From positions 122,807,593-122,871,592 of the forward strand of contig NC_090378.1 of NCBI RefSeq assembly GCF_036365525.1: a stretch of 64,000 bases of DNA, given 5' to 3'. This document shows positions 6,126 through 61,289 of this stretch, one piece after another. Each line of letters starts with the position of its first letter. Position 1 is the first letter of the stretch. Origin of the DNA: Heterodontus francisci. Lineage: Eukaryota. A program made the position numbers and the translations under genes. Under the pieces are notes generated by a model. That model did no database searches. It was not told where the DNA came from and saw only the letters and a list, made by a program, of their open reading frames with translations.

Positions 6126-6129
6126 AACA

Positions 6130-7816: not shown

Positions 7817-7876
7817 GCAGAGCCCAGTGAAGGGAGAGTTTATCAGTAACCAGGCACAGAGACAGGAGCAGGCACC

Positions 7877-7925
7877 ATGATTTCACCCATCCAGCTGATC
7901 TGGCCTCTGGCATTCTGCGTCGCAG
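7877..7925 (+). CDS. IGKV: Ig kappa-type light-chain leader exon (MISPIQLIWPLAFCVA-G)
   Basis: Kozak gcaccATG at 7877, hydrophobic signal peptide and a phase-1 donor G|gtacaa at 7926. The 186-bp intron ends at ...cccctcag (8111). Resembles shark kappa-type (NS4-like) leaders as recalled. Confidence 0.93.
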
Positions 7926-8111
7926 GTACAAATCTCTCTCCTTCCACGGTTAATATTTTCCTGCTGTTTGTTTCAGTCCAATTCTACTGACTTGTGATTG
8001 GAGAGAAAATGCTGAAACATGAGGAGCGGTCACTGTCTCTAATAATATCTCATTTTACAGGGTCTTTCTGTGACAGTTCTTACTTCACTCTGTTTCTCTA
8101 TTACCCCTCAG

Positions 8112-8413: not shown

Positions 8414-8441
8414 CACAGTGAGACAGAGCCTTACAAAAACC
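8414..8441 (+). other. V recombination signal sequence, 12-bp spacer (perfect consensus)
   Basis: CACAGTG (8414-8420), AGACAGAGCCTT (12 bp), ACAAAAACC (8433-8441). Confidence 0.98.
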
Positions 8442-8446
8442 TCAAT

Positions 8447-11400
8447 ACACACAGTCCCACCTCCTGTCCTGACACATCCCACAGTTATATATAATATATA
8501 ATAATGGACACACAGTCCCACCTCCTGCACTGACACATCCCACAGTTATATATAATATATAATAATGGACACACAGTCCCACCTCCTGTACTGACACGTC
8601 CCACAGTTATATATAATATATAATAATGGACTCACAGTCCCACCTCCTGTACTGACACATCCCACAGTTATATATAATATATAATAATAGACACACAGTC
8701 CCACCTCCAGCACTGACACGGCCCACAGTTATATATAATATATAATAATGGACACACAGTCCCACCTCCTGTACTGACACATCCCACAGTTATATATAAT
8801 ATATAATAATGGACACACAGTCCCACCTCCTGTACTGACGCATCCCACAGTTATATATAATATATAATAATGGACACACAGTCCCACCTCCTGTACTGAC
8901 ACGGCCCACAGTTATATATAATATATAATAATGGACACACAGTCCCACCTCCTGTACTGACACGGCCCACAGTTATATATAATATATAATAATGGACACA
9001 CAGTCCCACCTCCTGTACTGACACGGCCCACAGTTATATATAATATATAATAATGGACACACAGTCCCACCTCCTGTACTGACACGGCCCACAGTTATAT
9101 ATAATATATAATAATGGACACACAGTCCCACCTCCTGTACTGACACATCCCACAGTTATATATAATATATAATAATGGATACACAGTCCCACCTCCTGTA
9201 CTGACACGGCCCACAGTTATATACAATATATAATAATGGACACACAGTCCCACCTCCTGTACTGACACGGCCCACAGTTATATATAATATATAATAATGG
9301 ACACACAGTCCCACCTCCTGTACTGACACGGCCCACAGTTATATACAATATATAATAATGGACACACAGTCCCACCTCCTGTACTGACACGGCCCACAGT
9401 TATATATAATATATAATAATGGACACACAGTCCCACCTCCAGCACTGACACGGCCCACAGTTATATATAATATATAATAATGGATACACAGTCCCACCTC
9501 CTGTACTGACACGGCCCACAGTTATATATAATATATAATAATGAACACACAGTCCCACCTCCTGTACTGACGCATCCCACAGTTATATATAATATATAAT
9601 AATGGACACACAGTCCCAGCTCCTGTACTGACACGGCCCACAGTTATATATAATATATAATAATGGACACACAGTCCCAGCTCCTGTACTGACACGGCCC
9701 ACAGTTATATATAATATATAATAATGAACACACAGTCCCACCTCCTGTACTGACGCATCCCACAGTTATATATAATATATAATAATGGACACACAGTCCC
9801 AGCTCCTGTACTGACACGGCCCACAGTTATATATAATATATAATAATGGACACACAGTCCCACCTCCTGTACTGACACGGCCCACAGTTATATATAATAT
9901 ATAATAATGAACACACAGTCCCACCTCCTGTACTGACGCATCCCACAGTTATATATAATATATAATAATGGACACACAGTCCCAGCTCCTGTACTGACAC
10001 GGCCCACAGTTATATATAATATATAATAATGGACGCACAGTCCCACCTCCTATACTGACGCATCCCACAGTTATATATAATATATAATAATGGACACACA
10101 GTCCCAGCTCCTGTACTGACACATCCCACAGTTATATATAATATATAATAATGGACGCACAGTCCCACCTCCTATACTGACGCATCCCACAGTTATATAT
10201 AATATATAATAATGGACAGACAGTCCCACCTCCTGTACTGACACGGCCCACAGTTATATATAATATATAATAATGGACACACATTCCCACCTCCTGTACT
10301 GACACGGCCCACAGTTATATATAATATATAATAATGGACGCACAGTCCCACCTCCGAGACTGACGCATCCCACAGTGATATATAATATATAATAATGGAC
10401 ACACATTCCCACCTCCTGTACTGACACGGCCCACAGTTATATATAATATATAATAATGAACACACAGTCCCAACCCCTGCACTGACACGTCCCACAGTTA
10501 TATATAATATATAATAATGGATACACAGTCCCAACCCCTGCACTGACACGTCCCACAGTTATATATAATATATAATAATGAACACACAGTCCCAACCCCT
10601 GCACTGACACATCCCACAGTTATATATAATATATAATAATGGACACACAGTCCCACCTCCTGTACTGACACATCCCACAGTTATATATAATATATAATAA
10701 TGGATACACAGTCCCAAGCCCTGCACTGACACGTCCCACAGTTATATATAATATATCATAATGAACACACAGTCCCACCTCCTGTACTGACACATCCCAC
10801 AGTTATATATAATATATAATAATGGACACACAGTCCCACCTCCCGCACTGACACATCCCACAGTTATATATAATATATAATAATGGATACACAGTCCCAA
10901 CCCCTGCACTGACACGTCCCACAGTTATATATAATATATAATAATGGACACACAGTCCCACCTCCTGTACTGACACATCCCACAGTTATATATAATATAT
11001 AATAATGGATACACAGTCCCAACCCCTGCACTGACACGTCCCACAGTTATATATAATATATAATAATGGACACACAGTCCCACCTCCTGTACTGACACAT
11101 CCCACAGTTATATATAATATATAATAATGGATACACAGTCCCAACCCCTGCACTGACACGTCCCACAGTTATATATAATATATAATAATGGACACACAGT
11201 CCCAGCTCCTGTACTGACACGGCCCACAGTTATATATAATATATAATAATGAACACACAGTCCCACCTCCTGTACTGACACATCCCACAGTTATATATAA
11301 TATATAATAATGGATACACAGTCCCAACCCCTGCACTGACACGTCCCACAGTTATATCTAATATATAATAATGGATACACAGTCCCACCTCCTGTACTGA

Positions 11401-14400
11401 CACATCCCACAGTTATATATAATATATAATAATGGATACACAGTCCCAACCCCTGCACTGACACGTCCCACAGTTATATATAATATATAATAATGGACAC
11501 ACAGTCCCACCTCCTGTACTGACACATCCCACAGTTATATATAATACATAATAATGGATACACAGTCCCAACCCCTGCACTGACACGTCCCACAGTTATA
11601 TATAATATATAATAATGGACACACTGTCCCACCTCCTGTACTGACACATCCCACAGTTATATATAATATATAATAATGGATACACAGTCCCAAGCCCTGC
11701 ACTGACACGTCCCACAGTTATATATAATATATCATAATGAACACACAGTCCCACCTCCTGTACTGACACATCCCACAGTTATATATAATATATAATAATG
11801 GACACACAGTCCCACCTCCCGCACTGACACATCCCAAAGTTATATATAATATATAATAATGGACACACAGTCCCACCTCCTGTACTGACGCATCCCACAG
11901 TTATATATAATATATAATAATGGACACACAGTCCCACCTCCTGTACTGACGCATCCCACAGTTATATATAATATATAATAATGGACACACAGCCCCACCT
12001 CCTGTCCTGACAGATCCCACTGTTATCTAGAATATATAATAATGGGCTCACAGTCCCACGTCCTGTACTGACACATCCCACAGTTATATATAAGACATAA
12101 TATTGGACACACAGTCCCACCTCCTGTACTGACACATCCGACAGTTATCTAGAATATATAATAATGGACACACAGTCCCACCTCCCGCACTGACACATCC
12201 GACAGTTATATATAATATATAATAATGGACACACAGTCCCACCTCCTGCACTGACACATCCCACATTTATATATGATACATAATAATGGACACACAGTCC
12301 CACCTCCCGCACTGACACATCCCACAGTTATATATAATATATAATAATGGACGCACAGTCCCACCTCCTCGACTGACACGTTCCACAGTTATATATAATA
12401 TATAATAATGGACACACAGTCCCACCTCCTGTACTGACACATCCCACAGTTATATATAACATATAATAATGGACACACAGTCCCACCTCCCGCACTGACA
12501 CATCCCACAGTTATATATAATATATAATAATGGACACACAGTCCCACCTCCTCGACTGACACTTTCCACAGTTATATATAATATATAATAAGGGACGCAC
12601 AGTCCCACCTCCTCGACTGACACGTTCCACAGTTATATATAATATATAATAATGGAGACACAGTCCCACCTCCTTGATTTACACGTTCCACAGTTATATA
12701 TAATATATAGTAATGGACACACAGTCCCACCTCCCGCACTGACACATCCCACAGTTATATATAATATCTAATAATGGACGCACAGTCCCACCTCCTCGAC
12801 TGACACGTTCCACAGTTATATATAATATATAATAATGGACACACAGTCCCACCTCCTGCACTGACACATCCCACAGTTATATATAATATATAATAATGGA
12901 CGCACCGTGCCACCTCCTCGACTGACACGTTCCACAGTTATATATAATATATAATAATGGACAGACAGTCCCACCTCCCGCACTGACACATCCCACAGTT
13001 ACATATAATATATAATAATGGACGCACAGTCCCACCTCCTCGACTGACACGTTCCACAGTTATATATAATATATAATATTGGAAACACAGTCCCACCTCC
13101 CATTATGACACATCCGACAGTTATATATAATATATAATATTGGACACATAGCCCCACCTCCTGTCCTGACAGATCCCACTGTTATCTAGAATATATAATA
13201 ATGGGCTCACAGGCCCAAGTCCTGTACTGACACATCCCACAGTTATATATAATATATGTTCATGGACACACAGTCCCACCTCCCGCACTGACACATCCCA
13301 CAGTTATATATAAGACATAATATTGGACACACAGTCCCACCTCCTGTACTGACACATCCGACAGTTATCTAGAATATATAATAATGGACACACAGTCCCA
13401 CCTCCCGCACTGACACATCCGACAGTTATATATAATATATAATAATGGACACACAGTCCCACCTCCTGCACTGACACATCCCACAGTTATATATAATATA
13501 TAATAATGGACACACAGTCCCACCTCCTGTACTGACACATCCCACATTTATATATGATATATAATAATGGACACACAGTCCCACCTCCTGTACTGACACA
13601 TCCGACAGTTATCTAGAATATATAATAATGGACACACAGTCCCACCTCCCTCACTGAAACATCCGACAGTTATATATAATATATAATAATGGACACACAG
13701 TCCCACCTCCTGCACTGACACATCCCACAGTTATATATAATATATAATAGTGGACACACAGTCCCACCTCCTGGACTGACACATCCCACAGTTATATATA
13801 ATATATAATAATGGACACACAGTCCCACCTCCTGCACTGACACATCCCACAGTTATATATAATATATAATAGTGGACACACAGTCCCACCTCCTGTACTG
13901 ACACATCCCACATTTATATATGATATATAATAATGGACACACAGTCCCACCTCCCGCACTGACACATCCCACAGTTATATATAATATATAATATTGGACG
14001 CACAGTCCCACCTCCTCGACTGACACGTTCGACAGTTATATATAATATATAATAATGGACACACAGTCCCACCTCCTGTACTGACACATCCCACAGTTAT
14101 ATATAATATATAATAATGGACACACAGTCCCACCTCCCGCACTGACACATCCCACAGTTATATATAATATATAATAATGGACACACAGTCCCACCTCCTC
14201 GACTGACACTTTCCACAGTTATATATAATATATAATATTGGACGCACAGTCCCACCTCCTCGACTGACACGTTCGACAGTTATATATAATATATAATAAT
14301 GGACACACAGTCCCACCTCCTGTACTGACACATCCCACAGTTATATATAATATATAATAATGGACACACAGTCCCACCTCCCGCACTGACACATCCCACA

Positions 14401-17400
14401 GTTATATATAATATATAATAATGGACACACAGTCCCACCTCCTCGACTGACACTTTCCACAGTTATATATAATATATAATAATGGACGCATAGTCCCACC
14501 TCCCACACTGACACGTTCCACAGTTATATATAATATATAATAATGGACACACAGTCCCACCTCCCGCACTGACACATCCCACAGTTATATATAATATATA
14601 ATATTGGACACACAGTCCCACCTCCTGCACTGACACATCCCACAATTATATATTATATATAATAATGGACTCACAGTCCCACCTCCTCTACTGACACAAC
14701 CCACAGTTATACATAATATATAATATTGGACACACAGTCCCAACTCCTGCACTGACACATCCCACAGTTATACATAATATATAATATTGGATACACAGTC
14801 CCACCTCCCGCACTGACACATCCCACAATTATATATTATATATAATAATGGACTCACAGTCCCACCTCCTCTACTGACACAACCCACAGTTATAGATAAT
14901 ATATAATAATGGACACACAGTCCCACCTCCCGCACTGACACATCCCACAATTATATATTATATATAATAATGGACTCACAGTCCCACCTCCTCTACTGAC
15001 ACAACCCACAGTTATATATAATATATAATATTGGACACACAGTCCTACCTCCCGCACTGACACATCCCACAGTTATATATAATATATAATATTGGACACA
15101 CAGTCCCACCTCCTGCACTGACACATCCCACAATTATATATAATATATAATAATGGACTCACAGTCCCACCTCCTCTACTGACACAACCCACAGTTATAT
15201 ATAATATATAATAATGGATACACAGTCCCACCTCCCGCACTGACACATCCCACAGTTATATATAATAGATAATAATGGACACACAGTCCCACCTCCTCTA
15301 CTGACACAACCCACAGTTATATATAATAGATAATAATGGACACACAGTCCCACCTCCTGCACTGACACATCCCACATTTATATATTATATATAATAATGG
15401 ACACAAAATCCCACCTCCCGCTCTGACACATCCCACAGTTATATATAATATATAATAATCGACACACAGTCCCACCTCCCGCACTGACCCATCCCACAGT
15501 TATATATAATATATAATAATGGACACACAGTCCCACCTCCTGTCCTGACACATCCCTCAGTTATATATAATAAATAATAATGGACACACAGTCCCACCCC
15601 CTGTACTGACACATCCCACTGTTATCTAGAATATATAATAATGGGCTCACAGTCCCACGTCCTGTACTGACACATCCCACAGTTATATATAATATATGTT
15701 CATGGACACACAGTCCCACCTCCCGCACTGACACATCCCACAGTTATATATAATATATAATAATGGACACACAGTCCCACCTCCTGCACTGACACATCCC
15801 ACATTTATATATAATATATAATAATGGACACACAGTCCCACCTCCTGTACTGACACATCCCACAGTTATATTTAATATATAATAATGGACACACAGTCCC
15901 ACCTCCTGTACTGACACATCCCACAGTTATATCTAATATATAATAATGGACACACAGTCCCACCTCCTGGACTGACACGTCCCACAGTTATATATAAGAC
16001 ATAATATTGGACACACAGTCCCACCTCCTGTACTGACACATCCCACAGTTATATATAATATATAATAATGGACACACAGTCCCACCTCCCGCACTGACAC
16101 ATCCCACAGTTATATATAATATATAATAATGGACACACAGTCCCACCTCCTCGACTGACACTTTCCACAGTTATATATAATATATAATAATGGACGCATA
16201 GTCCCACCTCCCACACTGACACGTTCCACAGTTATATATAATATATAATAATGGACACACAGTCCCACCTCCCGCACTGACACATCCCACAGTTATATAT
16301 AATATATAATATTGGACACACAGTCCCACCTCCTGCACTGACACATCCCACAATTATATATTATATATAATAATGGACTCACAGTCCCACCTCCTCTACT
16401 GACACAACCCACAGTTATATATAATATATAATAATGGACACACAGTCCCACCTCCCGCACTGACACATCCCACAGTTATATATCATATATAATAATGGAC
16501 ACACAGTCCCACCTCCCGCACTGACACATCCCACAGTTATATATAATAGATAATAATGGACACACAGTCCCACCTCCTGCACTGACACATCCCACATTTA
16601 TATATTATATATAATAATGGACACAAAATCCCACCTCCCGCTCTGACACATCCCACAGTTATATATAATATATAATAATGGACACACAGTCCCACCTCCT
16701 GCACTGACACATCCCACATTTATATATAATATATAATAATGGACACACAGTCCCACCTCCTGTACTGACACATCCCACAGTTATATATAATATATAATAA
16801 TCGACACACAGTCCCACCTCCTGTCCTGACACATCCCTCAGTTATATATAATATATAATAATGGACACACAGTCCCACCTCCTGCACTGACACATCCCAC
16901 AGTTATATATAATATATAATAATGGACACACAGTCCCACCCCCTGTACTGACACATCCCACTGTTATCTAGAATATATAATAATGGGCTCACAGTCCCAC
17001 GTCCTGTACTGACACATCCCACAGTTATATATAATATATGTTCATGGACACACAGTCCCACCTCCCGCACTGACACATCCCACAGTTATATATAATATAT
17101 AATAATGGACACACAGTCCCACCTCCTGCACTGACACATCCCACATTTATATATAATATATAATAATGGACACACAGTCCCACCTCCTGTACTGACACAT
17201 CCCACAGTTATATTTAATATATAATAATGGACACACAGTCCCACCTCCTGTACTGACACATCCCACAGTTATATCTAATATATAATAATGGACACACAGT
17301 CCCACCTCCTGGACTGACACGTCCCACAGTTATATATAAGACATAATATTGGACACACAGTCCCACCTCCTGTACTGACACATCCCACAGTTATATATAA

Positions 17401-20400
17401 TATATAATAATGGACACACAGTCCCACCTCCCGCACTGACACATCCCACAGTTATATATAATATATAATAATGGACACACAGTCCCACCTCCTCGACTGA
17501 CACTTTCCACAGTTATATATAATATATAATAATGGACGCATAGTCCCACCTCCCACACTGACACGTTCCACAGTTATATATAATATATAATAATGGACAC
17601 ACAGTCCCACCTCCCGCACTGACACATCCCACAGTTATATATAATATATAATATTGGACACACAGTCCCACCTCCTGCACTGACACATCCCACAATTATA
17701 TATTATATATAATAATGGACTCACAGTCCCACCTCCTCTACTGACACAACCCACAGTTATATATAATATATAATAATGGACACACAGTCCCACCTCCCGC
17801 ACTGACACATCCCACAGTTATATATCATATATAATAATGGACACACAGTCCCACCTCCCGCACTGACACATCCCACAGTTATATATAATAGATAATAATG
17901 GACACACAGTCCCACCTCCTGCACTGACACATCCCACATTTATATATTATATATAATAATGGACACAAAATCCCACCTCCCGCTCTGACACATCCCACAG
18001 TTATATATAATATATAATAATGGACACACAGTCCCACCTCCTGCACTGACACATCCCACATTTATATATAATATATAATAATGGACACACAGTCCCACCT
18101 CCTGTACTGACACATCCCACAGTTATATATAATATATAATAATCGACACACAGTCCCACCTCCTGTCCTGACACATCCCTCAGTTATATATAATATATAA
18201 TAATGGACACACAGTCCCACCTCCTGCACTGACACATCCCACAGTTATATATAATATATAATAATGGACACACAGTCCCACCCCCTGTACTGACACATCC
18301 CACTGTTATCTAGAATATATAATAATGGGCTCACAGTCCCACGTCCTGTACTGACACATCCCACAGTTATATATAATATATGTTCATGGACACACAGTCC
18401 CACCTCCCGCACTGACACATCCCACAGTTATATATAATATATAATAATGGACACACAGTCCCACCTCCTGCACTGACACATCCCACATTTATATATAATA
18501 TATAATAATGGACACACAGTCCCACCTCCTGTACTGACACATCCCACAGTTATATCTAATATATAATAATGGACACACAGTCCCACCTCCTGGACTGACA
18601 CGTCCCACAGTTATATATAAGACATAATATTGGACACACAGTCCCACCTCCTGTACTGACACATCCGACAGTTATATATAATATATAATATTGGACACAC
18701 AGCCCCACCTCCTGTCCTGACAGATCCCACTGTTATCTAGAATATATAATAATGGGCTCACAGTCCCACGTCCTGTACTGACACATCCCACAGTTATATA
18801 TAATAAATGTTCATGGACACACAGTCCCACCTCCCGCACTGACACATCCCACAGTTATATATAAGACATAATATTGGACACACAGTCCCACCTCCTGTAC
18901 TGACACATCCGACAGTTATCTAGAATATATAATAATGGACACACAGTCCCACCTCCCGCACTGACACATCCGACAGTTATATATAATATATAATAATGGA
19001 CACACAGTCCCACCTCCTGCACTGACACATCCCACATTTATATATGATATATAATAATGGACACACAGTCCCACCTCCCGAACTGACACATCCCACAGTT
19101 ATATATAATATATAATAATGGACGCACAGTCCCACCTCCTCGACTGACACGTTCCACAGTTATATATAATATATAATAATGGACACACAGTCCCACCTCC
19201 TGTACTGACACATCCCACAGTTATATATAATATATAATAATGGACACACAGTCCCACCTCCCGCACTGACACATCCCACAGTTATATATAATATATAAGA
19301 ATGGACACACAGTCCCACCTCCTCGACTGACACTTTCCACAGTTATATATAATATATAATAATGGACGCACAGTCCCACCTCCTCGACTGACACGTTCCA
19401 CAGTTCGATATAATATATAATAATGGAGACACAGTCCCACCTCCTTGATTTACACTTTCCACAGTTATATATAATATATAGTAATGGACACACAGTCCCA
19501 CCTCCCGCACTGACACATCCCACAGTTATATATAATATCTAATAATGGACGCACAGTCCCACCTCCTCGACTGACACGTTCCACAGTTATACATAATATA
19601 TAATAATGGACACACAGTCCCACCTCCTGCACTGACACATCCCACAGTTATATATAATATATATTAATGGACGCACCGTGCCACCTCCTCGACTGACACG
19701 TTCCACAGTTATATATAATATATAATAATGGACAGACAGTCCCACCTCCCGCACTGACACATCCCACAGTTATATATAATATCTAATAATGGACGCACAG
19801 TCCCACCTCCTGTATTGACACGTTCCACAGTTATATATAATATATATTAATGGACGCACCGTGCCACCTCCTCGACTGACACGTTCCACAGTTATATATA
19901 ATATATAATAATGGACACACAGTCCCACCTCCTGCACTGACACATCCCACAGTTATATATAATATATATTAATGGACGCACCGTGCCACCTCCTCGACTG
20001 ACACGTTCCACAGTTATATATAATATATAATAATGGACAGACAGTCCCACCTCCCGCACTGACACATCCCACAGTTATATATAATATATAATAATGGACA
20101 CACAGTCCCACCTCCTGCACTGACACATCCCACAGTTATATATAATATATATTAATGGACGCACCGTGCCACCTCCTCGACTGACACGTTCCACAGTTAT
20201 ATATAATATATAATAATGGACAGACAGTCCCACCTCCCGCACTGACACATCCCACAGTTAGATATAATATATAATAATGGACACACAGTCCCACCTCCCG
20301 CACTGACACATCCCACAGTTATATATAATATATAATAATGGACACACAGTCCCACCTCCCGCACTGACACATCCCACAGTTATATATAATATATAATAAT

Positions 20401-47400: not shown

Positions 47401-50400
47401 TATATAATAATGGACACACAGTCCCACCTCCCGCACTGACACATCCCACTGTTATATATAATATATAACAATGGACACACAGTCCCACCTCCTCGACTGA
47501 CACTTTCCACAGTTATATATAATATATAATAAGGGACGCACAGTCCCACCTCCTCGACTGACACGTTCCACAGTTATATATAATATATAATAATGGAGAC
47601 ACAGTCCCACCTCCTTGATTTACACGTTCCACAGTTATATATAATATTTAGTAATGGACACACAGTCCCACCTCCCGCACTGACACATCCCACAGTTATA
47701 TATAATATATAATAAGGGACGCACAGTCCCACCTCCTCGACTGACACGTTCCACAGTTATATATAATATATAATAATGGAGACACAGTCCCACCTCCTTG
47801 ATTTACACGTTCCACAGTTATATATAATATATAGTAATGGACACACAGTCCCACCTCCCGCACTGACACATCCCACAGTTATATATAATATATAATAATG
47901 GACACACAGTCCCACCTCCTGCACTGACACATCCCACAGTTATATATAATATATAATAATGGACGCACCGTGCCACCTCCTCGACTGACACGTTCCACAG
48001 TTATATATAATATATAATAATGGACAGACAGTCCCACCTCCCGCACTGACACATCCCACAGTTATATATAATATATAATAATGGACGCACAGTACCACCT
48101 CCTCGACTGACACGTTCCACAGTTATATATAATATATAATAATGGACACACAGTCCCACCTCCCGCACTGACACATCCCACAGTTATATATAATATATAA
48201 TAATGGACGCACAGTCCCACCTCCTCGACTGACACGTTCCACAGTTATATATAATATATAATATTGGAAACACAGTCCCACCTCCCATTATGACACATCC
48301 CACAGTTATATATAATATATAATAATGGAAACACAGTCCCACCTCCCGCACTGAAACATCCCACAGTTATATATAATATATAATAATGGACACACTGTCC
48401 CACCACCTGCACTGACACATCCCACAGTTATATATAATATATAATAATGGACACACAGTCCCACCTCCCGCACTGACACATCCCACAGTTATAGAAAATA
48501 TATAATAATCGACACACAGTCCCACCTCCTGCACTGACACATCCCACAGTTATATATAATGATAATAATGGACACACAGTCCCACCTCCCGCACTGACAC
48601 ATCCCACAGTTATATATAGTATATAATAATGGACACACAGTCCCACCTCCCGCACTGACACATCCCACAGTTATATATAATATATAATAATGGACACACA
48701 GTCCCACCACCTGTACTGACACATCCGACAGTTATATATAATATATAATAATGGACACACAGTCCCACCTCCCGCACTGACACATCCCACAGTTATATAT
48801 AGTATATAATAATGGACACACAGTCCCACCTCCCGCACTGACACATCCCACAGTTATATATAGTATATAATAATGGACACACAGTCCCACCTCCCGCACT
48901 GACACATTTCACAGTTATATATAGTATATAATAATGGACACACAGTCCCACCTCCCGCACTGACACATCTCACAGTTATATATAGTATATAATAATGGAC
49001 ACACAGTCCCACCTCCCGCACTGACATCCCACAGTTATATATAATATATAATAATGGACGCACAGTCCCACCTACCCGACTGACATGTTCCACATTTATA
49101 TATAATATATAATAATGGACTCACAGCCCTCCTCCCGCACTGACACATCCCACAGTTATAGATAATATATAATAATGGACGCACAGTCCCACCTCCCGCA
49201 CTGACACATCCCACAGTTATATATAATATATAATAATGGACACACAGTCCCACCTCCCGCACTGACACATCCCACAGTTATATATATATATAATAATGGA
49301 TGCACAGTCCCACCTCCTCGACTGACACGTTCCACAGTTATATATAATATATAATAAGGGACGCACAGTCCCACCTCCTCGACTGACACGTTCCACAGTT
49401 ATATATAATATATAATTAGGGACGCACAGTCCCACCTCCTCGACTAACACGTTCCACAGTTATATATAATATATAATAAGGGACGCACAGTCCCACCTCC
49501 TCGACTGACACGTTCCACTGTTATATATAATATATAATATGGGACGCACAGTCCCACCTCCTCGACTGACACGTTCCACTGTTATATATAATATATAATA
49601 ATGGATGCACAGTCCCACCTTCCGCACTGACACATCCCACTGTTATATATAATATATAATAATGGACACACAGTCGCACCTCCTGCACTGACACATCCCA
49701 CAGTTATATATAATATATAATAATGGACACACAGTCCCACCTCCTGAACTGACACATCCCACAGTTATATATAATATATAATAATGGACGCACAGTCCCA
49801 CCTCCTGTACTGACACATCCCACTGTTATATCTAATATATAATAATGGACACACAGTCCCACCTCCTGGACTGACACGTCCCACAGTTATATATAAGACA
49901 TAATATTGGACACACAGTCCCACCTCCTGTACTGACACATCCGACAGTTATATATAATATATAATATTGGACACACAGTCCCACCTCCTGTACTGACACA
50001 TCCGACAGTTATATATAATATATAATATTGGACACACAGCCCCACCTCCTGTACTGACACATCCCACAGTTATATATAATATATGTTCATGGACACACAG
50101 TCCCACCTCCCGCACTGACACATCCCACAGTTATATATAAGACATAATATTGGACACACAGTCCCACCTCCTGTACTGACACATCCGACAGTTATCTAGA
50201 ATATATAATAATGGACACACAGTCCCACCTCCCGCACTGACACATCCGACAGTTGTATATAATATATAATAATGGACACACAGTCCCACTTCCCGCACTG
50301 ACACATCCCACAGTTATATATAATATATAATATTGGACGCACAGTCCCACCTCCTCGACTGACACGTTCCACAGTTATATATAATATATAATAATGGACA

Positions 50401-53400
50401 CACAGTCCCACCTCCTGTACTGACACATCCCACAGTTATATATAATATATAATAATGGACACACAGTCCCACCTCCCGCACTGACACATCCCACAGTTAT
50501 ATATAATATATAATAATGGACACACAGTCCCACCTCCTCGACTGACACTTTCCACAGTTACATATAATATATAATAATGGACGCACAGTCCCACCTCCTC
50601 GACTGACACGTTCCACAGTGATATATAATATATAATAATGGAGACACAGTCCCACCTCCTTGATTTACACGTTCCACAGTTATATATAATATATAGTAAT
50701 GGACACACAGTCCCACCTCCCGCACTGACACATCCCACAGTTATATATAATATATAATAATGGACGCACAGTACCACCTCCTCGACTGACACGTTCCACA
50801 GTTATATATAATATATAATAATGGACACACAGTCCCACCTCCCGCACTGACACATCCCACAGTTATATCTCATATATAATAATGGACGCACAGTCCCACC
50901 TGCTCGACTGACACGTTCCACAGTTATATATAAGATATAATATTGGAAACACAGTCCCACCTCCCATTATGACAAATCCCACAGTTATATATAATATATA
51001 ATAATGGAAACACAGTCCCACCTCCCGCACTGAAACATCCCACAGTTATATATAGTATATAATAATGGACACACAGTCCCACCTCCTGTACTGACACATC
51101 CCACAGTTATATATAATATATAATAATGGACACACAGTCCCACCACCTGCACTGACACATCCCACAGTTATATATAATATATAATAATGGAAACACAGTC
51201 CCACCTCCCGCACTGAAACATCCCACTGTTATATATAATATATAATAATGGACACACGGTCCCACCTCCTGTACTGACACATCCCACAGTTATATATAAT
51301 ATATAATAATCGACACACAGTCCCACCTCCTGCACTGACACATCCCACAGTTATATATAATATATAATAATCGACACACAGTCCCACCTCCTGCACTGAC
51401 ACATCCCACAGTTATATATAATATATAATAATGGAAACACAGTCCCGCCTCCCGCACTGACACATCCCACAGTTATATATAATATATAATAATGGAAACA
51501 CAGTCCCACCTCCCACACTGAAACATCCCACAGTTATATATAGTATATAATAATGGATACACTGTCCCACCTCCCGCACTGACACATCCCACAGTTATAT
51601 ATAATATATAATAATGGAAACACAGTCCCACCTCCCGCACTGAAACATCCCACAGTTATATATAATATATAATAATGGACACACAGTCCCACCTCCCGCA
51701 CTGACACATCCCACAGTTATATATAATATATAATAATGGACACACAGTCCCACCTCCCGCACTGACACATCCCACAGTTATATATAATATATAATAATGG
51801 ACACACAGTCCCACCTCCCGCACTGACATCCCACAGTTATATATAATATATAATAATGGACGCACAGTCCCACCTACCCGACTGACATGTTCCACATTTA
51901 TATATAATATATAATAATGGACTCACAGCCCACCTCCCGCACTGACACATCCCACAGTTATAGATAATATATAATAATGGACACACAGTCCCACCTCCCG
52001 CACTGACACATCCCACAGTTATATATAATATATAATAATGGATACACAGTCCCACCTCCCGCACTGACATCCCACAGTTATAGATAATATATAATAATGG
52101 ACACACAGTCCCACCTCCCGCACTGACACATCCCACAGTTATATATAATATATAATAATGGACGCACAGTCCCACCTACCCGACTGACATGTTCCACATT
52201 TATATATAATATATAATAATGGACTCACAGCCCACCTCCCGCACTGACACATTCCACAGTTATATATAATATATAATAATGAACACACAGTCCCACCTCC
52301 TCGACTGACACGTTCCACAGTTATATATAATATATAATAATGGACGCACAGTCCCACCTACCCGACTGACATGTTCCACATTTATATATAATATATAATA
52401 ATGGACTCACAGCCCACCTCCCGCACTGACACATCCCACAGTTATATATAATATATAATAATGGATGCACAGTCCCACCTCCTCGACTGACACGTTCCAC
52501 AGTTATATATAATATATAATAAGGGACGCACAGTCCCACCTCCTCGACTGACACGTTCCACAGTTATATATAATATATAATAAGGGACGCACAGTCCCAC
52601 CTCCTCGACTAACACGTTCCACAGTTATATATAATATATAATAAGGGACGCACAGTCCCACCTCCTCGACTGACACGTTCCACAGTTATATATAATATAT
52701 AATAATGGACACACAGTCCCACCTCCTCGACTAACACGTTCCACAGTTATAGATAATATATAATAAGGGACGCACAGTCCCACCTCCTCGACTGACACGT
52801 TCCACTGTTATATATAATATATAATATGGGACGCACAGTCCCACCTCCCGCACTGACACATCCCACAGTTATATATAATATATAATAATGGACACACAGT
52901 CCCACCTCCTGCACTGACACATCCCACAGTTATAGATAATGTATAATAATGGACACACAGTCCGACCTCCTGCACTGACACATCCCACAGTTATATATAA
53001 TATATAATAATGGACACACAGTCCCACCTTCTGCACTGACACATCCCACAGTTATATATAATATATAATAATGGACACACAGTCCCACCTCCTCGACTAA
53101 CACGTTCCACAGTTATAGATAATATATAATAAGGGACGCACAGTCCCACCTCCTCGACTGACACGTTCCACTGTTATATATAATATATAATATGGGACGC
53201 ACAGTCCCACCTCCCGCACTGACACATCCCACAGTTATATATAATATATAATAATGGACACACAGTCCCACCTCCTGCACTGACACATCCCACAGTTATA
53301 TATAATATATAATAATGGACACACAGTCCCACCTCCTGTACTGACACATCCCACAGTTATATATAATATATAATAATGGACACACAGTCCCACCTCCTGT

Positions 53401-56400
53401 ACTGACACATCCCACAGTTAGATATAATATATAATAATGGACACACAGTCCCACCTCCTGTACTGACACATCCCACAGTTATATATAATATATAATAATG
53501 GACACACAGTCCCACCTCCTGTACTGACACATCCCACAGTTATATATAATATATAATAATGGACACACAGTCCCACCTCCTGTACTGACACATCCCACAG
53601 TTAGATATAATATATAATAATGGACACACAGTCCCACCTCCTGCACTGAAACATCCCACTGTTATATATAATATATAATAATGGACACACGGTCCCACCT
53701 CCTGTACTGACACATCCCACAGTTATATATAATATATAATAATGGACACACAGTCCCACCACCTGCACTGACACATCCCACAGTTATATATAATATATAA
53801 TAATGGACACACAGTCCCACCTCCCGCACTGACACATTCCACAGTTATATATAATATATAATAATCGACACACAGTCCCACCTCCTGCACTGACACATCC
53901 CACAGTTATATATAATATATAATAATCGACACACAGTCCCACCTCCTGCACTGACACATCCCACAGTTATATATAATATATAATAATGGAAACACAGTCC
54001 CGCCTCCCGCACTGACACATCCCACAGTTATATATAATATATAATAATGGAAACACAGTCCCACCTCCCGCACTGTAACATCCCACAGTTATATATAGTA
54101 TATAATAATGGATACACTGTCCCACCTCCCGCACTGACACATCCCACAGTTATATATAATATATAATAATGGAAACACAGTCCCACCTCCCGCACTGAAA
54201 CATCCCACAGTTATATATAATATATAATAATGGACACACAGTCCCACCTCCCGCACTGACACATCCCACAGTTATATATAATATATAATAATGGACACAC
54301 AGTCCCACCTCCCGCACTGACACATCCCACAGTTATATATAATATATAATAATGGACACACAGTCCCACCTCCCGCACTGACATCCCACAGTTATATATA
54401 ATATATAATAATGGACGCACAGTCCCACCTACCCGACTGACATGTTCCACATTTATATATAATATATAATAATGGACTCACAGCCCACCTCCCGCACTGA
54501 CACATCCCACAGTTATAGATAATATATAATAATGGACACACAGTCCCACCTCCCGCACTGACACATCCCACAGTTATATATAATATATAATAATGGATAC
54601 ACAGTCCCACCTCCCGCACTGACATCCCACAGTTATAGATAATATATAATAATGGACACACAGTCCCACCTCCCGCACTGACACATCCCACAGTTATATA
54701 TAATATATAATAATGGACGCACAGTCCCACCTACCCGACTGACATGTTCCACATTTATATATAATATATAATAATGGACTCACAGCCCACCTCCCGCACT
54801 GACACATTCCACAGTTATATATAATATATAATAATGAACACACAGTCCCACCTCCTCGACTGACACGTTCCACAGTTATATATAATATATAATAATGGAC
54901 GCACAGTCCCACCTACCCGACTGACATGTTCCACATTTATATATAATATATAATAATGGACTCACAGCCCACCTCCCGCACTGACACATCCCACAGTTAT
55001 ATATAATATATAATAATGGATGCACAGTCCCACCTCCTCGACTGACACGTTCCACAGTTATATATAATATATAATAAGGGACGCACAGTCCCACCTCCTC
55101 GACTGACACGTTCCACAGTTATATATAATATATAATAAGGGACGCACAGTCCCACCTCCTCGACTAACACGTTCCACAGTTATATATAATATATAATAAG
55201 GGACGCACAGTCCCACCTCCTCGACTGACACGTTCCACAGTTATATATAATATATAATAATGGACACACAGTCCCACCTCCTCGACTAACACGTTCCACA
55301 GTTATAGATAATATATAATAAGGGACGCACAGTCCCACCTCCTCGACTGACACGTTCCACTGTTATATATAATATATAATATGGGACGCACAGTCCCACC
55401 TCCCGCACTGACACATCCCACAGTTATATATAATATATAATAATGGACACACAGTCCCACCTCCTGCACTGACACATCCCACAGTTATAGATAATGTATA
55501 ATAATGGACACACAGTCCGACCTCCTGCACTGACACATCCCACAGTTATATATAATATATAATAATGGACACACAGTCCCACCTTCTGCACTGACACATC
55601 CCACAGTTATATATAATATATAATAATGGACACACAGTCCCACCTCCTCGACTAACACGTTCCACAGTTATAGATAATATATAATAAGGGACGCACAGTC
55701 CCACCTCCTCGACTGACACGTTCCACTGTTATATATAATATATAATATGGGACGCACAGTCCCACCTCCCGCACTGACACATCCCACAGTTATATATAAT
55801 ATATAATAATGGACACACAGTCCCACCTCCTGCACTGACACATCCCACAGTTATATATAATATATAATAATGGACACACAGTCCCACCTCCTGTACTGAC
55901 ACATCCCACAGTTATATATAATATATAATAATGGACACACAGTCCCACCTCCTGTACTGACACATCCCACAGTTAGATATAATATATAATAATGGACACA
56001 CAGTCCCACCTCCTGTACTGACACAACCCACTGTTATATATAATATATAATAATGGACACACAGTCACACCTCCTGCACTGACACATCCCACAGTTATAT
56101 ATAATATATAATAATGGACACACAGTCCCACCTCCTCGACTAACACGTTCCACAGTTATAGATAATATATAATAAGGGACGCACAGTCCCACCTCCTCGA
56201 CTGACACATCCCACAGTTATAGATAATATATAATAATGGACACACAGTCCCACCTCCTCGACTAACACGTTCCACAGTTATAGATAATATATAATAAGGG
56301 ACGCACAGTCCCAATTTCTCTACTGACACATCCACCGTTATATATAATATATAATAATGGACACACAGTCCCAATTTCACTACTGACACGTCCACAGTTA

Positions 56401-56721
56401 TATATAATATATAATAATGGACACACAGTCCCACCTCCTGTACTGACACATCCACCGTTATATATAATATATAATAATGGACACACAGTCCCACCTCCTG
56501 TACTGACACATCCCACAGTTATATATAATATATAATAATGGACACACAGTCACACCTCCTGCACTGACACATCCCACAGTTATATATAATATATAATAAT
56601 GGACACACAGTCCCACCTCCTGTACTGACACATCCCACAGTTATATATAATATTTAATAATGGACACACAGTCCCACCTCCTGTACCGACACATCCCACA
56701 GTTATATTTATTATATAATAA
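8447..56721. repeat. 61-bp tandem satellite array, ~48.3 kb, ~790 copies, in the V-J interval
   Basis: Consensus GGACACACAGTCCCACCTCCTGTACTGACACATCCCACAGTTATATATAATATATAATAAT (61 nt), head-to-tail in one orientation throughout, with recurrent variants. Copy number is span divided by 61. Confidence 0.99.
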
Positions 56722-57183
56722 ACAGACGTTCTATTAAAACAGTTGCTTCAATCTCCTGTCTTATCTATCTGGGAAATATTTGCTGTTTTGTGCATTGCTG
56801 CCACATGTGTCGATGAGAGTGTTGACAGAAACATTCCCCTGAACGGTGTGAGGAATTGAGAAAGGATGGAGGAGTTTAGAGAGGACGAGGAGCTGCTGTC
56901 TTCATCAGTGAGAATCTCACAGCTCTGGAGATTTGACATTTTGCTTCATTCGATTCTCTCTGGGTTCTCGTGGAGTCGCTTCATGAGCACAGACTAATTA
57001 TTGATCATTATTATTGACCCCCCATCCCAGGTCAGACACCCCAGGTCAGTTACTATGGAAACAGGTTTCTTATCATCTGATTGGACAATCTGGATGACAC
57101 AATTTTCACCAATCAAAATCCAATTTAGAAAAGTGTCGAAATGAATAAAACTGAAATCATAAATAGAAAGCAAACTGAACAAA

Positions 57184-57465
57184 TTAAAGCCTGATGTTAT
57201 TTCCACGATCCACTACACACTCCTGTCCCTGTGGTGCCCACTGCAGCCTGAAGGCCTCAAGTGACCCAGCAGACACCCCCTGCTCCTTCTCCAGGGCCAC
57301 CCGGGTGGGGACAATGCCATGGTAGAGAGACTGGCAGCCAGTGCCACCACCCCCATGGGTCCCATCCAACTCGGGCCTGTGGATGGACACCTTGGCCAGG
57401 CCCAGGAGCAGACCCACGAGGAGGGGCCTCCAACCTGCCCAGTCCCCTCTGCACTGGGTGGCCAA
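57184..57465 (-). mobile_element. Tx1/L1-clade LINE ORF2 C-terminal fragment
   Basis: Minus ORF LLVGLLLGLAKVSIHR...RVALEKEQGVSAGSLEAFRLQWAPQGQECVVDRGNNI matches the recalled C-terminus of shark Tx1-like ORF2 (LGLAK.AI..SR...RV.LE.EH....G.L..F..RWAP). Confidence 0.65.
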
Positions 57466-57829
57466 AGATCAGGAGTGTGGGCCTGAATTAGAACCAGAGG
57501 ATGAGGAGCAGCCCCTTCAAATAATGGAACAGGGGCCACAACCTCTCCCACTCCATGTAGACATGATCCACCGACTCTGAAACTCACTGTTTTCAAATGG
57601 TCCATGAGGAAGACCAGAGTCAGCAACAGAAACATCACATTTACAGAAACACTCCTCCCCTTTTCTCCAGGGCACAGGCAGGTGAGCTCGGTTAGCTGGG
57701 AGATTTTCATTTTCCAGGAATTGAGTGGCTCCAGGTTTTTCCATCTGATGTGGTGGGAAGAGCAGCTGGAAGATTTATCATCGACAAGTAGAATTCCCAA
57801 CTTTCCCAAGCATGGCAGCATGGAATTCA

Positions 57830-58092
57830 AACAGAGAGAGAGAGTGAAGCTGAGACAGCAGGAGAGAGAGAGAAACAGAGACAGTGGGAGAGAGAGAATG
57901 ACAGAAAGAGAGACAGTGAGAGAGAGAGAGAGAGATAAAGAGAGACAGTAGGAGAGAGAGAGAAAGTGCTAGAGAGAGACAGATAGAGAGAGAGAAAGAG
58001 TGAGAGAAAGAGAATGAGAGAAAGAGAGAGAGGGAGATAGTGAGATAGACAGAGGGAAAGAGCACAAGAGGGACAGCGTGAGAGAGAGAGAT
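57830..58092. repeat. (GA)n-rich microsatellite tract
   Basis: Directly visible gaga/gaca repeats. Confidence 0.9.
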
Positions 58093-58866
58093 GGCTGGTT
58101 GGCCCAGTGGACATTGGGACTCTGACTTCTGGCCTATATGAGGGTCCCGAGCCTGCCCATGTCATCAGCACTCGCCGGAGCAACTTTCTGGGAGGCAGCC
58201 TCTTAATTGGTCACCTCCACACTCACTGTCCTATTAATGATGGCAGTCAGGCTCCCGAGCCTGCAGGCCCAATCAGAGGGCCCACAGTGATGTCAGGCTG
58301 GCAGCTCCACCGGGAGAGGTGGGCCCTGCTGAAACAGGCAGGCGAGAGTGAGGGCCCCTCAACATGGAGACGCCCTTGGCTGCCTGCAGAGGAATAGTAA
58401 AATAAAAAGGGCTGAAGCCAGTTGGGCCATCAGGTTGAAGAGGGTTAGGGTTAGGAAACTCCTCCACAGGATTATTAACAGGCGGGACTGCAGCTTTTCA
58501 TCCCTGTAGCTCTGTCATTGGGACATAGAGTCTCCGTCTCCGATGGTCCCCTGGCCTGCTGCCGGGAGGCCTCCTCCATTGAGCTGGTGGCCTCCGCACT
58601 CGGGGGTGGGGAGGCCGCTCCGACGTTGGTAAAATACCAGCACCGGCTCAAAAATGGCCCCTAAATGTGAACTTCATTGCTCTAATTGTCTGCCCATCTC
58701 CATGGAGGCAGCAGATGACCGGTTCCCAGTACACCCATGGGAAAGTAACCCGGAGGCGGGAATGTGTCAGGGAGCCATGTTGACACGGCTCGTCGTATTT
58801 TTCCCAGTCCTGCCCAACCTCCAAATGAGAACCCCGTCTCCATGGCACCGGGAGAATTCATCCCAG
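58093..58866. repeat. GC-rich, probably interspersed repeat (unclassified, possibly a non-autonomous DNA element)
   Basis: GC-rich block between two GA tracts with motifs (cttaattgg, ggcccaatcagagggcc, gtaaaat) recalled from abundant shark repeats. No termini or TSD established. Confidence 0.3.
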
Positions 58867-58869
58867 TCT

Positions 58870-59737
58870 GTTAGAGACAGAGAGAGAGAAAGTGAGAGAG
58901 AGAGAAAGAGAGAGAGAGTGAGAGGGAGAAAAAGAGAGACAGAGTGAGAAAGAGAGACAAAGTGAGAGAGTGAGAGAGAGAGAAAGAGAGAGATAGTGAG
59001 AGGGAGAAAAAGAGAGACAGAGTGAGACTGAATGAGAGNNNNNNNNNNNNNNNNNNNNNNNNNNNNNNNNNNNNNNNNNNNNNNNNNNNNNNNNNNNNNN
59101 NNNNNNNNNNNNNNNNNNNNNNNNNNNNNNNNNNNNNNNNNNNNNNNNNNNNNNNNNNNNNNNNNNNNNNNNNNNNNNNNNNNNNNNNNNNNNNNNNNNN
59201 NNNNNNNNNNNNNNNNAGAGAGACAGAGTGAGGCAGAATGAGAGAGTGAGAGTGAGAAAGAGAGAGAGAGTGAGAGAGAAAGAAAGAGAGAGACAGTGAG
59301 AGGGAGAAAAAGAGAGACAGAGTGAGGGAGTGAGAGAGAGTGAGAAAGAGAGACAGAGTGAGTGAGAGAAAGAGAGAGACAGATTGAGAGAGAGTGTGAG
59401 AGAGAGAGAGCGTGTGACAGAGACAGAGTAACAGGGAGTGAGAGAGAGGGACATAATGAGAGAGTGAAAGAGACAGAGTGAGAGAAAACAATGAGAGAGA
59501 GACAGAATGTGAGAGAAACCCAAAGTAGCAGAGACAGAGTGTGACACACTGTGAACGACACACACAGACAGAGACAGACAGAAGCACACATAGAGACAGA
59601 GACAAATAGATATATATAGAGAGAGTGTGAGAGACAGAGACACACATACACACAGGCAAAGAGTGACAGAGAGAGAGACACAGTGACAGTGAAAGACAGA
59701 GAGAGGGTGAGAGTGAGTGAGTGAAACAGAGAGCAGA
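58870..59737. repeat. (GA)n-rich tract abutting the J RSS, interrupted by an assembly gap
   Basis: gaga/gaca/gagt repeats running up to the J nonamer. Confidence 0.9.
59039..59216. other. Assembly gap (178 N)
   Basis: Run of n characters. Confidence 0.99.
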
Positions 59738-59776
59738 GGATATTGTACAGCCCCTGCACTGGAAGCTGTCAGTGTG
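59738..59776 (-). other. J recombination signal sequence, 23-bp spacer (non-consensus)
   Basis: Plus strand GGATATTGT (59738-59746), 23 bp, CAGTGTG (59770-59776). Read as an RSS this is CACACTG (6/7) - 23 - ACAATATCC (7/9), convergent with the V 12-RSS. Confidence 0.92.
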
Positions 59777-59811
59777 GTTTACGTTCGGTAAAGGAACCAA
59801 GCTCAGACTGA
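59777..59811 (+). CDS. IGKJ: Ig kappa-type J segment (FTFGKGTKLRL-)
   Basis: G TTT ACG TTC GGT AAA GGA ACC AAG CTC AGA CTG A|gtaagt: FGXG motif and a consensus phase-1 donor at 59812, preceded by the 23-RSS. Not in the ORF track because it is short. Confidence 0.95.
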
Positions 59812-61254: not shown

Positions 61255-61289
61255 CTGATATTTATCTCTGAACCGATGTCACTGAAAAT

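What the first reader, a model, noticed from the sequence alone, without database searches (positions are those of the whole stretch)
8414..59776. Ig kappa V and J held ~51 kb apart by a 48-kb satellite that V-J joining would excise
Seen: an intact V with a perfect 12-RSS and a J with a convergent 23-RSS enclose 51,363 bp, ~94% of it one 61-bp array. Established: cartilaginous-fish IgL genes are V-J-C miniloci whose V and J are normally close (hundreds of bp to about a kb) and rearrange within the cluster by deletion. Inference: rearrangement here would delete the whole array as a ~51-kb signal-joint circle, a RAG-mediated somatic elimination of satellite DNA. Array length could tune or block use of this cluster through distance and heterochromatin, a possible way to set usage or exclusion among many clusters. 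It could equally be a satellite sheltered where B cells delete it.
Basis: partly seen in the sequence, partly recalled or inferred. Interest (0 to 1): 0.88.

Follow-up and report, generated by a model that had tools for sequence, protein, structure and literature searches.

The report
Satellite-swollen shark kappa V-J interval
An intact and expressed horn-shark-type antibody kappa V gene lies 51 kb from its J segment, not the textbook ~0.5 kb, because a 48-kb satellite sits right after the V recombination signal; other kappa clusters in this genome seem to share this, which is new for shark antibody genes, though the satellite has no shown function.

Summary
Window 7877-8413 holds an intact kappa leader and V with a perfect 12-RSS. 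A J with a convergent 23-RSS sits at 59738-59811. The signal ends enclose 51,363 bp, of which 48,275 bp (94%) is one 61-bp array starting 5 bp after the V nonamer.

The N gap (59039-59216) is non-coding and lies inside one GA-rich minisatellite that continues on both sides, so continuity is likely but not proven.

RNA contigs from the assembled individual show the V transcribed and its leader intron spliced. They also show the V joined, with varied junctions, to a J sequence identical to this J. The array therefore does not block use.

A second horn shark kappa gene model reads through the same RSS-satellite junction. Unchecked scan notes list about ten more clusters with 15-51 kb arrays.

Deletional V-J joining would excise the array as a by-product. 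Regulation by array length is untested. I found no prior description in the paper library.

Verdict: a real new variant of the shark light-chain minicluster. Interest is moderate to high, and the array is most likely a passenger.

The parts
7763..7817 (+). Promoter region: octamer-like ATTTACAT (7763-7770) and TATAAA-like box (7811-7816)
   Evidence: Read from the sequence. RNA contig coverage starts in the bins at 7786-7847. Its role as a promoter is inferred, not tested.
7877..7925 (+). Leader exon (MISPIQLIWPLAFCVA)
   Evidence: Translation. It is 100% identical to the leader of horn shark kappa cDNA protein P0002. RNA contigs cover it.
7926..8111 (+). Leader intron, 186 bp, GT..AG
   Evidence: Spliced out in RNA contigs of X1 (15 contigs), X7 (2) and X8 (1). 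It has the same length as the nurse shark NS4 leader intron (PMC2193156).
8112..8413 (+). Intact kappa V exon (germline CDR3 end QQAKSWSI)
   Evidence: Open frame. Pfam V-set 2.6e-18. 93-94% identical to Heterodontus francisci kappa chains. Very high RNA contig depth that falls about 100-fold after 8405.
8414..8441 (+). V 12-RSS: CACAGTG, 12-bp spacer, ACAAAAACC (perfect)
   Evidence: It is the only 16/16 RSS in the window.
8447..56721 (+). 61-bp satellite array, about 792 head-to-tail units in one orientation, starting 5 bp after the V nonamer
   Evidence: TRF gives period 61, 792 copies and 91% matches. Units differ by about 10% on average and there is no short higher-order repeat. There are many multi-kb, near-identical internal duplications, for example about 27.7-33.2 kb against a copy 13,722 bp further on at 99.5-100% identity. 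Each unit carries CACAGTC and CACAGTT, co-oriented with the V-RSS. Unit sequences also occur in an independent sample, X10.
56722..59737 (+). Non-satellite remainder of the V-J interval: unique DNA plus GA-rich minisatellites (57833-58091, 58873-59038, 59217-about 59720)
   Evidence: Its ORFs have no Pfam domain. It has no similarity to the DNA upstream of V.
59039..59216 (.). Assembly gap (178 N) inside the GA-rich minisatellite
   Evidence: The flanks are specifically alike: a 32-nt exact shared word, and score 189 against controls of 119 +/- 13. I did not fill it.
59738..59776 (+). J 23-RSS: GGATATTGT, 23-bp spacer, CAGTGTG (nonamer 7/9, heptamer 6/7 with CAC kept)
   Evidence: Its in-frame translation RAEDIVQPLHWKLSVW is identical to the read-through in gene model P0029 from another horn shark kappa cluster.
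59777..59811 (+). J segment (FTFGKGTKLRL plus the first base of the next codon), followed by a GTAAGT splice donor at 59812-59817
   Evidence: It is identical to the J of cDNA protein P0002. The same nucleotide sequence follows the V end in RNA contigs.

Best explanation
This is a working immunoglobulin kappa (type III/NS4-type) light-chain cluster of a horn shark, Heterodontus francisci or a very close relative.

Its V-J intervening DNA has been inflated from the usual ~0.5 kb to 51 kb by a 61-bp satellite seated 5 bp beyond the V nonamer. The satellite junction is shared with other kappa clusters of this genome. It was therefore probably present before the clusters multiplied, or was spread among them, rather than arising only at this locus.

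Each array has since grown and shrunk by unequal exchange. This array carries many multi-kb, near-identical internal duplications on a background of about 10% divergence between units.

In developing B cells, RAG pairs the perfect V 12-RSS with the J 23-RSS and joins V to J by deletion. The array and the 3-kb remainder leave on a signal-joint circle of about 51.4 kb.

Shown here: the anatomy, transcription and splicing of the V, and V-J joined mRNA carrying this V's germline end and this J's sequence.

Inferred: that the J used is this particular copy, that the circle forms, and that the array itself is a tolerated passenger with no required function.
For: - Anatomy.
- Kappa identity and species: 93-94% identity to H. 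francisci kappa chains, including a cDNA protein with the same CDR1, the same FR3 signature and an identical J.
- Single segments: one L, one V and one J, with no other Ig segment in the window.
- RNA: coverage of exons only; the 186-bp intron spliced at GT..AG in three runs; a depth drop of about 100-fold at the V end; contigs that match the V up to 8413 or 8409 and then continue with 2-5 non-templated letters followed by the J sequence of 59778 onward. The junctions differ between contigs, so joining is somatic rather than germline.
- Family trait: gene model P0029, from another cluster on the same 137-Mb record, reads through its V-RSS into a sequence that matches the translation of this window's RSS, 5-bp linker and first satellite unit at 20 of 23 residues. 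It also has an identical J-RSS read-through.
- Scan notes, unchecked: about ten further kappa V genes over about 7.4 Mb of this chromosome with the same arrangement and V-J intervals of 15-51 kb.
- Array dynamics.
- Gap flanks are one minisatellite.
Against: - Continuity of V, array and J rests on an assembly with an N gap 521 bp upstream of the J-RSS. No read spanning the whole interval was examined.
- Internal duplications at 99.5-100% identity could partly be assembly artefacts, so the array length is uncertain by several kb to about 14 kb.
- J sequences are probably shared among clusters, and a near-twin cluster is noted 5.09 Mb away. The RNA therefore cannot prove that this very V copy joined this very J copy.
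- The C exon is outside the window.
- The RNA runs are Logan contigs, so they give no quantitative usage.
- Passenger status is a default assumption, not a demonstrated fact.
Confidence: 0.7

Rival explanations
1. The array has a function in cis. Its length, chromatin state, or its roughly 1,300 heptamer-like motifs co-oriented with the V-RSS lower or time the chance that a given cluster completes a productive V-J join. It might act as a distance or heterochromatin barrier, or as a sink for RAG moving out from the J-RSS. That would help limit how many of the many kappa clusters rearrange in one B cell.
For: - The array abuts the RSS at the same place in a second cluster. By the scan notes it is kept in about ten clusters with different lengths.
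- Every unit carries CACAGTC and CACAGTT in the V-RSS orientation: 1,291 copies against 84 in the opposite orientation. 455 units parse as heptamer 6/7, a 23-bp spacer and nonamer 6/9.
- CpG observed/expected is 0.51 in the array against 0.22-0.25 in the flanks.
- How sharks limit rearrangement among many clusters is an open question (PMC2435157).
Against: - There are no data on usage against array length.
- This V, behind one of the longest arrays, is expressed in rearranged form.
- The heptamer-like positions are no better conserved than other non-hotspot positions, 0.968 against about 0.967.
- The nonamer-like parts lack the A-tract. The best unit layout is a 23-type signal, which could not pair with the J 23-RSS under the 12/23 rule.
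- Co-orientation is automatic in any one-directional array.
- Retention in all clusters is also expected from recent cluster duplication alone.
Confidence: 0.15
2. Assembly or scaffolding artefact. V plus array and J plus downstream DNA are separate contigs joined across the N gap, or the array is mis-sized. In that case the true partner J of this V is elsewhere, or the true interval is quite different.
For: - An N gap lies between the array and J.
- Perfect multi-kb internal duplicates occur in the array.
- No long read spanning the interval was inspected.
Against: - The gap flanks are the same GA-rich minisatellite, with a 32-nt exact shared word and an alignment score well above controls.
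- The J-RSS and J are of the family type, and nothing else Ig-like lies between them and the V.
- A second cluster's gene model links V, the RSS-satellite junction, the J-RSS, J and C.
- By the scan notes, several other clusters show V-array-J(-C) with varying lengths.
- The satellite is also present in another sample (X10).
Confidence: 0.1
3. The cluster is disabled. This particular V-J pair no longer recombines because of the distance or the imperfect J-RSS, and the observed transcripts come from a near-identical paralogue.
For: - The J-RSS has 1 heptamer and 2 nonamer mismatches.
- A look-alike cluster is noted 5.09 Mb upstream (unchecked).
- J sequences are shared between clusters.
Against: - The same J-RSS translation occurs in another annotated cluster, so it is the family norm.
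- The V, promoter region, splice sites and RSS are all intact.
- Contigs match the unique germline CDR3 end up to 8413.
- The noted twin has the same 51-kb architecture, so the biological conclusion would be unchanged.
Confidence: 0.05

Closest known systems
Nurse shark NS4 (kappa, type III) split light-chain clusters (Lee et al. 2000, PMC2193156)
   Same: One leader, one V and one J in the same orientation. The leader intron is 186 bp in both. The V and J sequences are kappa-type (P0082 is 78% identical in V). Joining is deletional within the cluster.
   Different: The NS4 V-J intervening sequence is about 500 bp (502-524 bp). Here it is 51,296 bp between the nonamers, 94% of it a 61-bp satellite.
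General cartilaginous-fish Ig minicluster model (reviewed in PMC5192425; PMC2435157)
   Same: The V-J(-C) unit is widely separated from the next cluster; by a scan note the next kappa V lies about 86 kb beyond the window. Rearrangement is presumed to be confined to the cluster.
   Different: The model states that recombining segments lie 250-500 bp apart and that no long-distance step is needed. This cluster requires synapsis across 51 kb.
Translocon kappa loci of bony vertebrates
   Same: Deletional V-J joining over tens of kb or more, which discards whatever repeats lie between on an excision circle. V carries the 12-RSS and J the 23-RSS.
   Different: Translocon loci hold many V and several J sharing one C. 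Their intervening DNA is other gene segments and dispersed repeats, not one homogeneous satellite abutting the RSS.
Programmed DNA elimination of satellites (lamprey, hagfish, nematodes, ciliates)
   Same: Satellite DNA is lost from a somatic lineage.
   Different: Those systems remove DNA genome-wide, early in development, by dedicated machinery. Here the loss would be a local by-product in the B cells that rearrange this cluster. It works unlike them and is not a member.
Cryptic RSS and off-target RAG cleavage at CAC motifs convergent with a recombination centre (from my own knowledge of mammalian RAG-scanning studies; not checked in the library)
   Same: About 1,300 CACAGT motifs face the J-RSS, the orientation in which cryptic sites are used in mammals.
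   Different: No use of these sites was shown here. The nonamer-like parts are poor (6/9 at most, with no A-tract).

Membership tests
Cartilaginous-fish Ig kappa (type III/NS4) light-chain cluster | Leader, intron and V exon encoding a kappa-type V-set domain with the conserved Cys, Trp and YYC | tested here: met
   93-94% identical to H. francisci kappa chains.
Cartilaginous-fish Ig kappa (type III/NS4) light-chain cluster | V carries a 12-RSS and J a 23-RSS, convergent, in the same transcriptional orientation | tested here: met
   The V-RSS is 16/16. The J-RSS has heptamer 6/7 and nonamer 7/9 with a 23-bp spacer.
Cartilaginous-fish Ig kappa (type III/NS4) light-chain cluster | J with an FGXG motif and a splice donor | tested here: met
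   FTFGKGTKLRL followed by GTAAGT. Identical to the J of the cDNA protein.
Cartilaginous-fish Ig kappa (type III/NS4) light-chain cluster | Compact layout: V and J a few hundred bp apart (250-500 bp) | tested here: not met
   51,296 bp between the nonamers, against about 500 bp in PMC2193156 and 250-500 bp in PMC5192425.
Cartilaginous-fish Ig kappa (type III/NS4) light-chain cluster | A single C exon a few kb downstream of J | tested here: inconclusive
   There is no C exon within the 4.2 kb after J, up to the window end (tblastn). It probably lies beyond 64000.
Cartilaginous-fish Ig kappa (type III/NS4) light-chain cluster | Somatic V-J joining and expression | tested here: met
   Spliced transcripts, and V-J junction contigs with varied junctions, carrying this V's germline end and this J's sequence. 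The specific copy cannot be proven.
Satellite DNA | A long, head-to-tail array of one unit in one orientation | tested here: met
   About 792 units of 61 bp over 48.3 kb.
Satellite DNA | Presence at several genomic sites and turnover by unequal exchange | tested here: inconclusive
   Internal multi-kb duplications are shown. Other sites are known only from the P0029 read-through and from unchecked scan notes.
Satellite DNA | Heterochromatic state | not testable with these tools
   No chromatin or methylation data. CpG observed/expected is 0.51 against 0.22-0.25 in the flanks, which is only a hint.
Functional (cryptic) RSS array | A CAC heptamer plus an A-rich nonamer at 12 or 23 bp, and cleaved by RAG | tested here: inconclusive
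   The heptamer is 6/7 in nearly every unit. The best nonamer is 6/9 at 23 bp in 455 units and 3-5/9 at 11-12 bp. Cleavage is not testable here.
Programmed DNA elimination | Dedicated, developmentally programmed removal of specific DNA from somatic lineages | tested here: not met
   Any loss here follows from ordinary V-J deletion at one locus in B cells. This is an inference from the anatomy.

The most novel reading that the evidence does not exclude
In horn shark, every kappa cluster carries, between V and J, a satellite of variable length made of co-oriented heptamer-like units. This array sets each cluster's probability or timing of productive rearrangement, through distance, chromatin or RAG capture at cryptic sites. 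It would be a built-in, fast-evolving control on cluster choice and light-chain exclusion in an animal with dozens of independent clusters.
Probability: 0.12. Interest if true: 0.85.

Novelty: new variant of a known kind. Interest (0 to 1): 0.6.

Why it matters
Shark antibody genes are the textbook case of compact miniclusters, with segments about 0.3-0.5 kb apart. That compactness underlies the argument that sharks need neither long-range synapsis nor locus contraction (PMC2435157).

Here an expressed kappa cluster has 51 kb of satellite between V and J. Apparently a whole family of such clusters exists, with arrays of 15-51 kb. So RAG joining across tens of kb of tandem repeat appears to be routine in a shark.

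The family also offers a natural series for testing how distance, repeat chromatin and cryptic heptamers affect recombination efficiency and cluster choice. For annotators, V and J of one shark cluster can lie in different 50-kb windows, and gene predictors read the array as an intron.

Tried and rejected
I could not fetch other horn shark clusters or other sharks' kappa loci, so there is no cross-species or cross-cluster DNA comparison.
- Self-BLAST of the array returned almost nothing because of hit culling. I replaced it with direct alignments and exact 150-mer lags.
- I looked for a short higher-order repeat and found none. Only lag 1 and a few long lags stand out.
- I tested whether the heptamer-like positions are specially conserved. 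They are not: 0.968 against about 0.967 for other non-hotspot positions. Variation sits at a few CpG/TpG/CpA sites.
- The non-array flanks share no similarity with each other.
- ORFs in the V-J remainder and the J-C intron have no Pfam domains.
- Rfam found nothing in the window.
- The findings search by sequence was blank.
- Literature searches found no description of satellite-filled V-J intervals in sharks. The CloseRead and VGP papers do not mention it. Subscription journals are not covered, so this absence is weak evidence.
- I considered a germline-joined paralogue as the source of the V-J contigs and rejected it, because the junctions differ between contigs.
Full report
**Observation.**
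- The window holds one kappa-type light-chain V gene and one J.
- The leader exon is 7877-7925.
- A 186-bp GT..AG intron follows, then the V exon at 8112-8413.
- In its proper frame the V exon is open and reads [11 protein letters not shown]...[11 protein letters not shown].
- It matches Pfam V-set at 2.6e-18.
- Directly after it come CACAGTG, a 12-bp spacer and ACAAAAACC (8414-8441). A window-wide scan finds no other 16/16 signal.
- At the far end the J signal is GGATATTGT (59738-59746), a 23-bp spacer and CAGTGTG (59770-59776). That is nonamer 7/9 and heptamer 6/7 with the critical CAC kept.
- The J segment 59777-59811 encodes FTFGKGTKLRL and is followed by a GTAAGT donor.
- The two heptamers enclose 51,363 bp. 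Tandem Repeats Finder reports one 61-bp array at 8447-56721 with 792 copies and 91% matches. That is 48,275 bp, or 94.0% of the interval, starting 5 bp after the V nonamer.
It consists of unique sequence plus GA-rich minisatellites.

**The gap.**
- The 178 N at 59039-59216 lie in non-coding DNA, 521 bp upstream of the J nonamer, so reading frame is not an issue.
- The two flanks belong to the same GA-rich minisatellite.
- They share a 32-nt exact word and align with score 189.
- First-order Markov controls score 119 +/- 13 (maximum 156). Other GA-rich stretches of the window score 70-150.
- This favours a dropout within a repeat over a join of unrelated contigs, but it does not prove continuity.

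**Identity.**
- The V is 93-94% identical to Heterodontus francisci kappa chains and less similar to those of other sharks. The window is therefore horn shark or a very close relative.
- The cDNA-derived protein P0002 has the same leader, FR1, CDR1 (QSVSKY) and FR3 signature (QQNLKF). It differs only at one FR2 residue, in CDR2 and in CDR3. Its J is identical to this J.
- tblastn with P0002 finds exactly one L, one V and one J in the window, and no C exon on either strand. C must lie more than 4.2 kb beyond J.

**Is the cluster used?**
- Four runs were laid on 7600-8520 at 96% likeness or better.
- X1, X7 and X8 come from the same animal as the DNA runs. They behave as RNA.
- Depth is nil upstream of about 7786, near nil in the leader intron, and very high on both exons.
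- The 186-bp intron is removed at GT..AG in 15, 2 and 1 contigs respectively.
- Depth falls about 100-fold after 8405.
- Loose ends at 8395-8398 belong to paralogous V genes that diverge in CDR3.
- Five X1 contigs match right up to 8413. One contig each in X7 and X8 matches up to 8409. These continue with 2-5 unmatched letters and then TTACGTTCGGTAAAGGAACCAAGCTCAG, the J sequence found at 59778 onward.
- The junctions differ between contigs, so this is somatic joining, not a germline-joined gene.
- This shows that a V with this exact germline CDR3 end is rearranged to a J of this sequence and expressed.
- It cannot prove that the copies involved are these two. J sequences are probably shared among clusters, and the scan notes mention a look-alike cluster 5.09 Mb away.

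**A family trait.**
- The NCBI gene model P0029 comes from another kappa cluster on the same 137-Mb record. It reads through its V signal as [23 protein letters not shown].
- That matches the frame-2 translation of this window's RSS, 5-bp linker and first satellite unit at 20 of 23 residues.
- It then resumes with RAEDIVQPLHWKLSVW, which is identical to the translation of this window's J signal.
- This is independent evidence that a second cluster has the same RSS-satellite junction and the same J-RSS.
- The scan's own notes are unchecked and used only as leads. They list about ten further kappa V genes over about 7.4 Mb of this chromosome with the same 61-bp satellite 2-6 bp from the nonamer. 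Their V-J intervals are 15.4, 21.5 and about 51 kb, or lower bounds of 17.7 to 46 kb.
- Satellite units also occur in run X10, from a different sample of the same species.

**The array.**
- All units point the same way.
- Mean pairwise difference is about 6 of 61 positions at any distance. It is slightly lower for neighbouring units, and there is no short higher-order repeat.
- Variation is concentrated at a few positions that are CpG/TpG/CpA alternatives.
- CpG observed/expected is 0.51 in the array against 0.22-0.25 in the flanks.
- On this background there are many multi-kb, near-identical internal duplications. For example, about 27.7-33.2 kb matches a copy 13,722 bp further on at 99.5-100% identity. 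Other lags are 3,717, 5,548, 2,555 and 8,174 bp.
- 40% of distinct 150-mers recur exactly.
- This is the signature of ongoing unequal exchange, and it fits the different array lengths reported among clusters.
- It is also a caveat, because some of these blocks could be assembly errors.
- Each unit carries CACAGTC and CACAGTT in the orientation of the V signal: 1,291 copies against 84 in the opposite orientation.
- The best RSS-like parse is heptamer 6/7, a 23-bp spacer and nonamer 6/9, found in 455 units. Parses with a 12-bp spacer have nonamers of 3-5/9.
- The heptamer-like positions are no more conserved than other non-hotspot positions, 0.968 against about 0.967.

**Mechanism.**
- The most likely reading (0.7) is an ordinary deletional V-J join by RAG under the 12/23 rule. 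The array and the 3-kb remainder would be discarded on a circle of about 51.4 kb.
- The array would be a tolerated passenger. It was probably seeded next to the V signal before the kappa clusters multiplied and has been resized since by unequal exchange.
- A regulatory role (0.15) is not excluded but has no direct support. It could act through distance, chromatin or capture of RAG at cryptic heptamers. Outright blocking is contradicted by the RNA evidence.
- An assembly artefact (0.1) and a dead cluster (0.05) are less likely.

**Comparison and novelty.**
- Nurse shark NS4 split genes have the same 186-bp leader intron but a V-J intervening sequence of only 502-524 bp (PMC2193156).
- Reviews give 250-500 bp for shark clusters generally (PMC5192425).
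- The absence of long-distance recombination has been used to argue that sharks dispense with locus contraction (PMC2435157).
- I found no description of satellite-filled V-J intervals in sharks in the held library. Subscription journals are not covered.
- I therefore class this as a new variant of a known kind. The 'somatic elimination of satellite' framing adds nothing beyond normal V(D)J deletion.

Noticed in passing
window 60432-60438 (with a nonamer-like GGTCTTACT 23 bp upstream): An isolated perfect J-type heptamer, CACTGTG, lies in the J-C intron about 620 bp downstream of J, with a 6/9 nonamer at 23-bp spacing. It recalls the intronic heptamer used with the kappa deleting element in mammals. 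Another scan note (s1-872288) proposes such a pair in a different cluster of this genome.
   Followed up: no
window 6044-6688: A 43-bp tandem repeat of about 11-15 copies at 97% matches lies about 1.2 kb upstream of the V gene. Its long ORF is just the repeat read through, and the weak Pfam hits to it are not meaningful.
   Followed up: partly
window 7188-7750, 57833-58091, 58873-59720: GA-rich, low-complexity minisatellites lie both directly upstream of the V promoter and upstream of the J signal. The assembly gap falls in one of them. Those upstream of V and those upstream of J are not specifically alike.
   Followed up: partly
window 758-3855 (+) and 62676-63509 (-): Decayed reverse-transcriptase (LINE-type) fragments flank the cluster, with Pfam RVT_1 at 7.8e-08 for 3595-3852. 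Sequences that look like SINEs lie at about 61280-61460 and 61870-62240, but Rfam found no tRNA-like match.
   Followed up: partly
window 8437-8520: Satellite words are present at low depth in the RNA runs: 2,400-13,400 in X1, against more than 2 million on the V exon. Summed over thousands of genomic copies, this could be read-through germline transcripts, pre-mRNA or DNA carry-over. I could not resolve which.
   Followed up: no
window 8447-56721: The array keeps about twice the CpG observed/expected ratio of its flanks (0.51 against 0.22-0.25). Its main variant positions are CpG/TpG/CpA alternatives. This could mean recent amplification of CpG-bearing units or reduced germline methylation.
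   Followed up: partly
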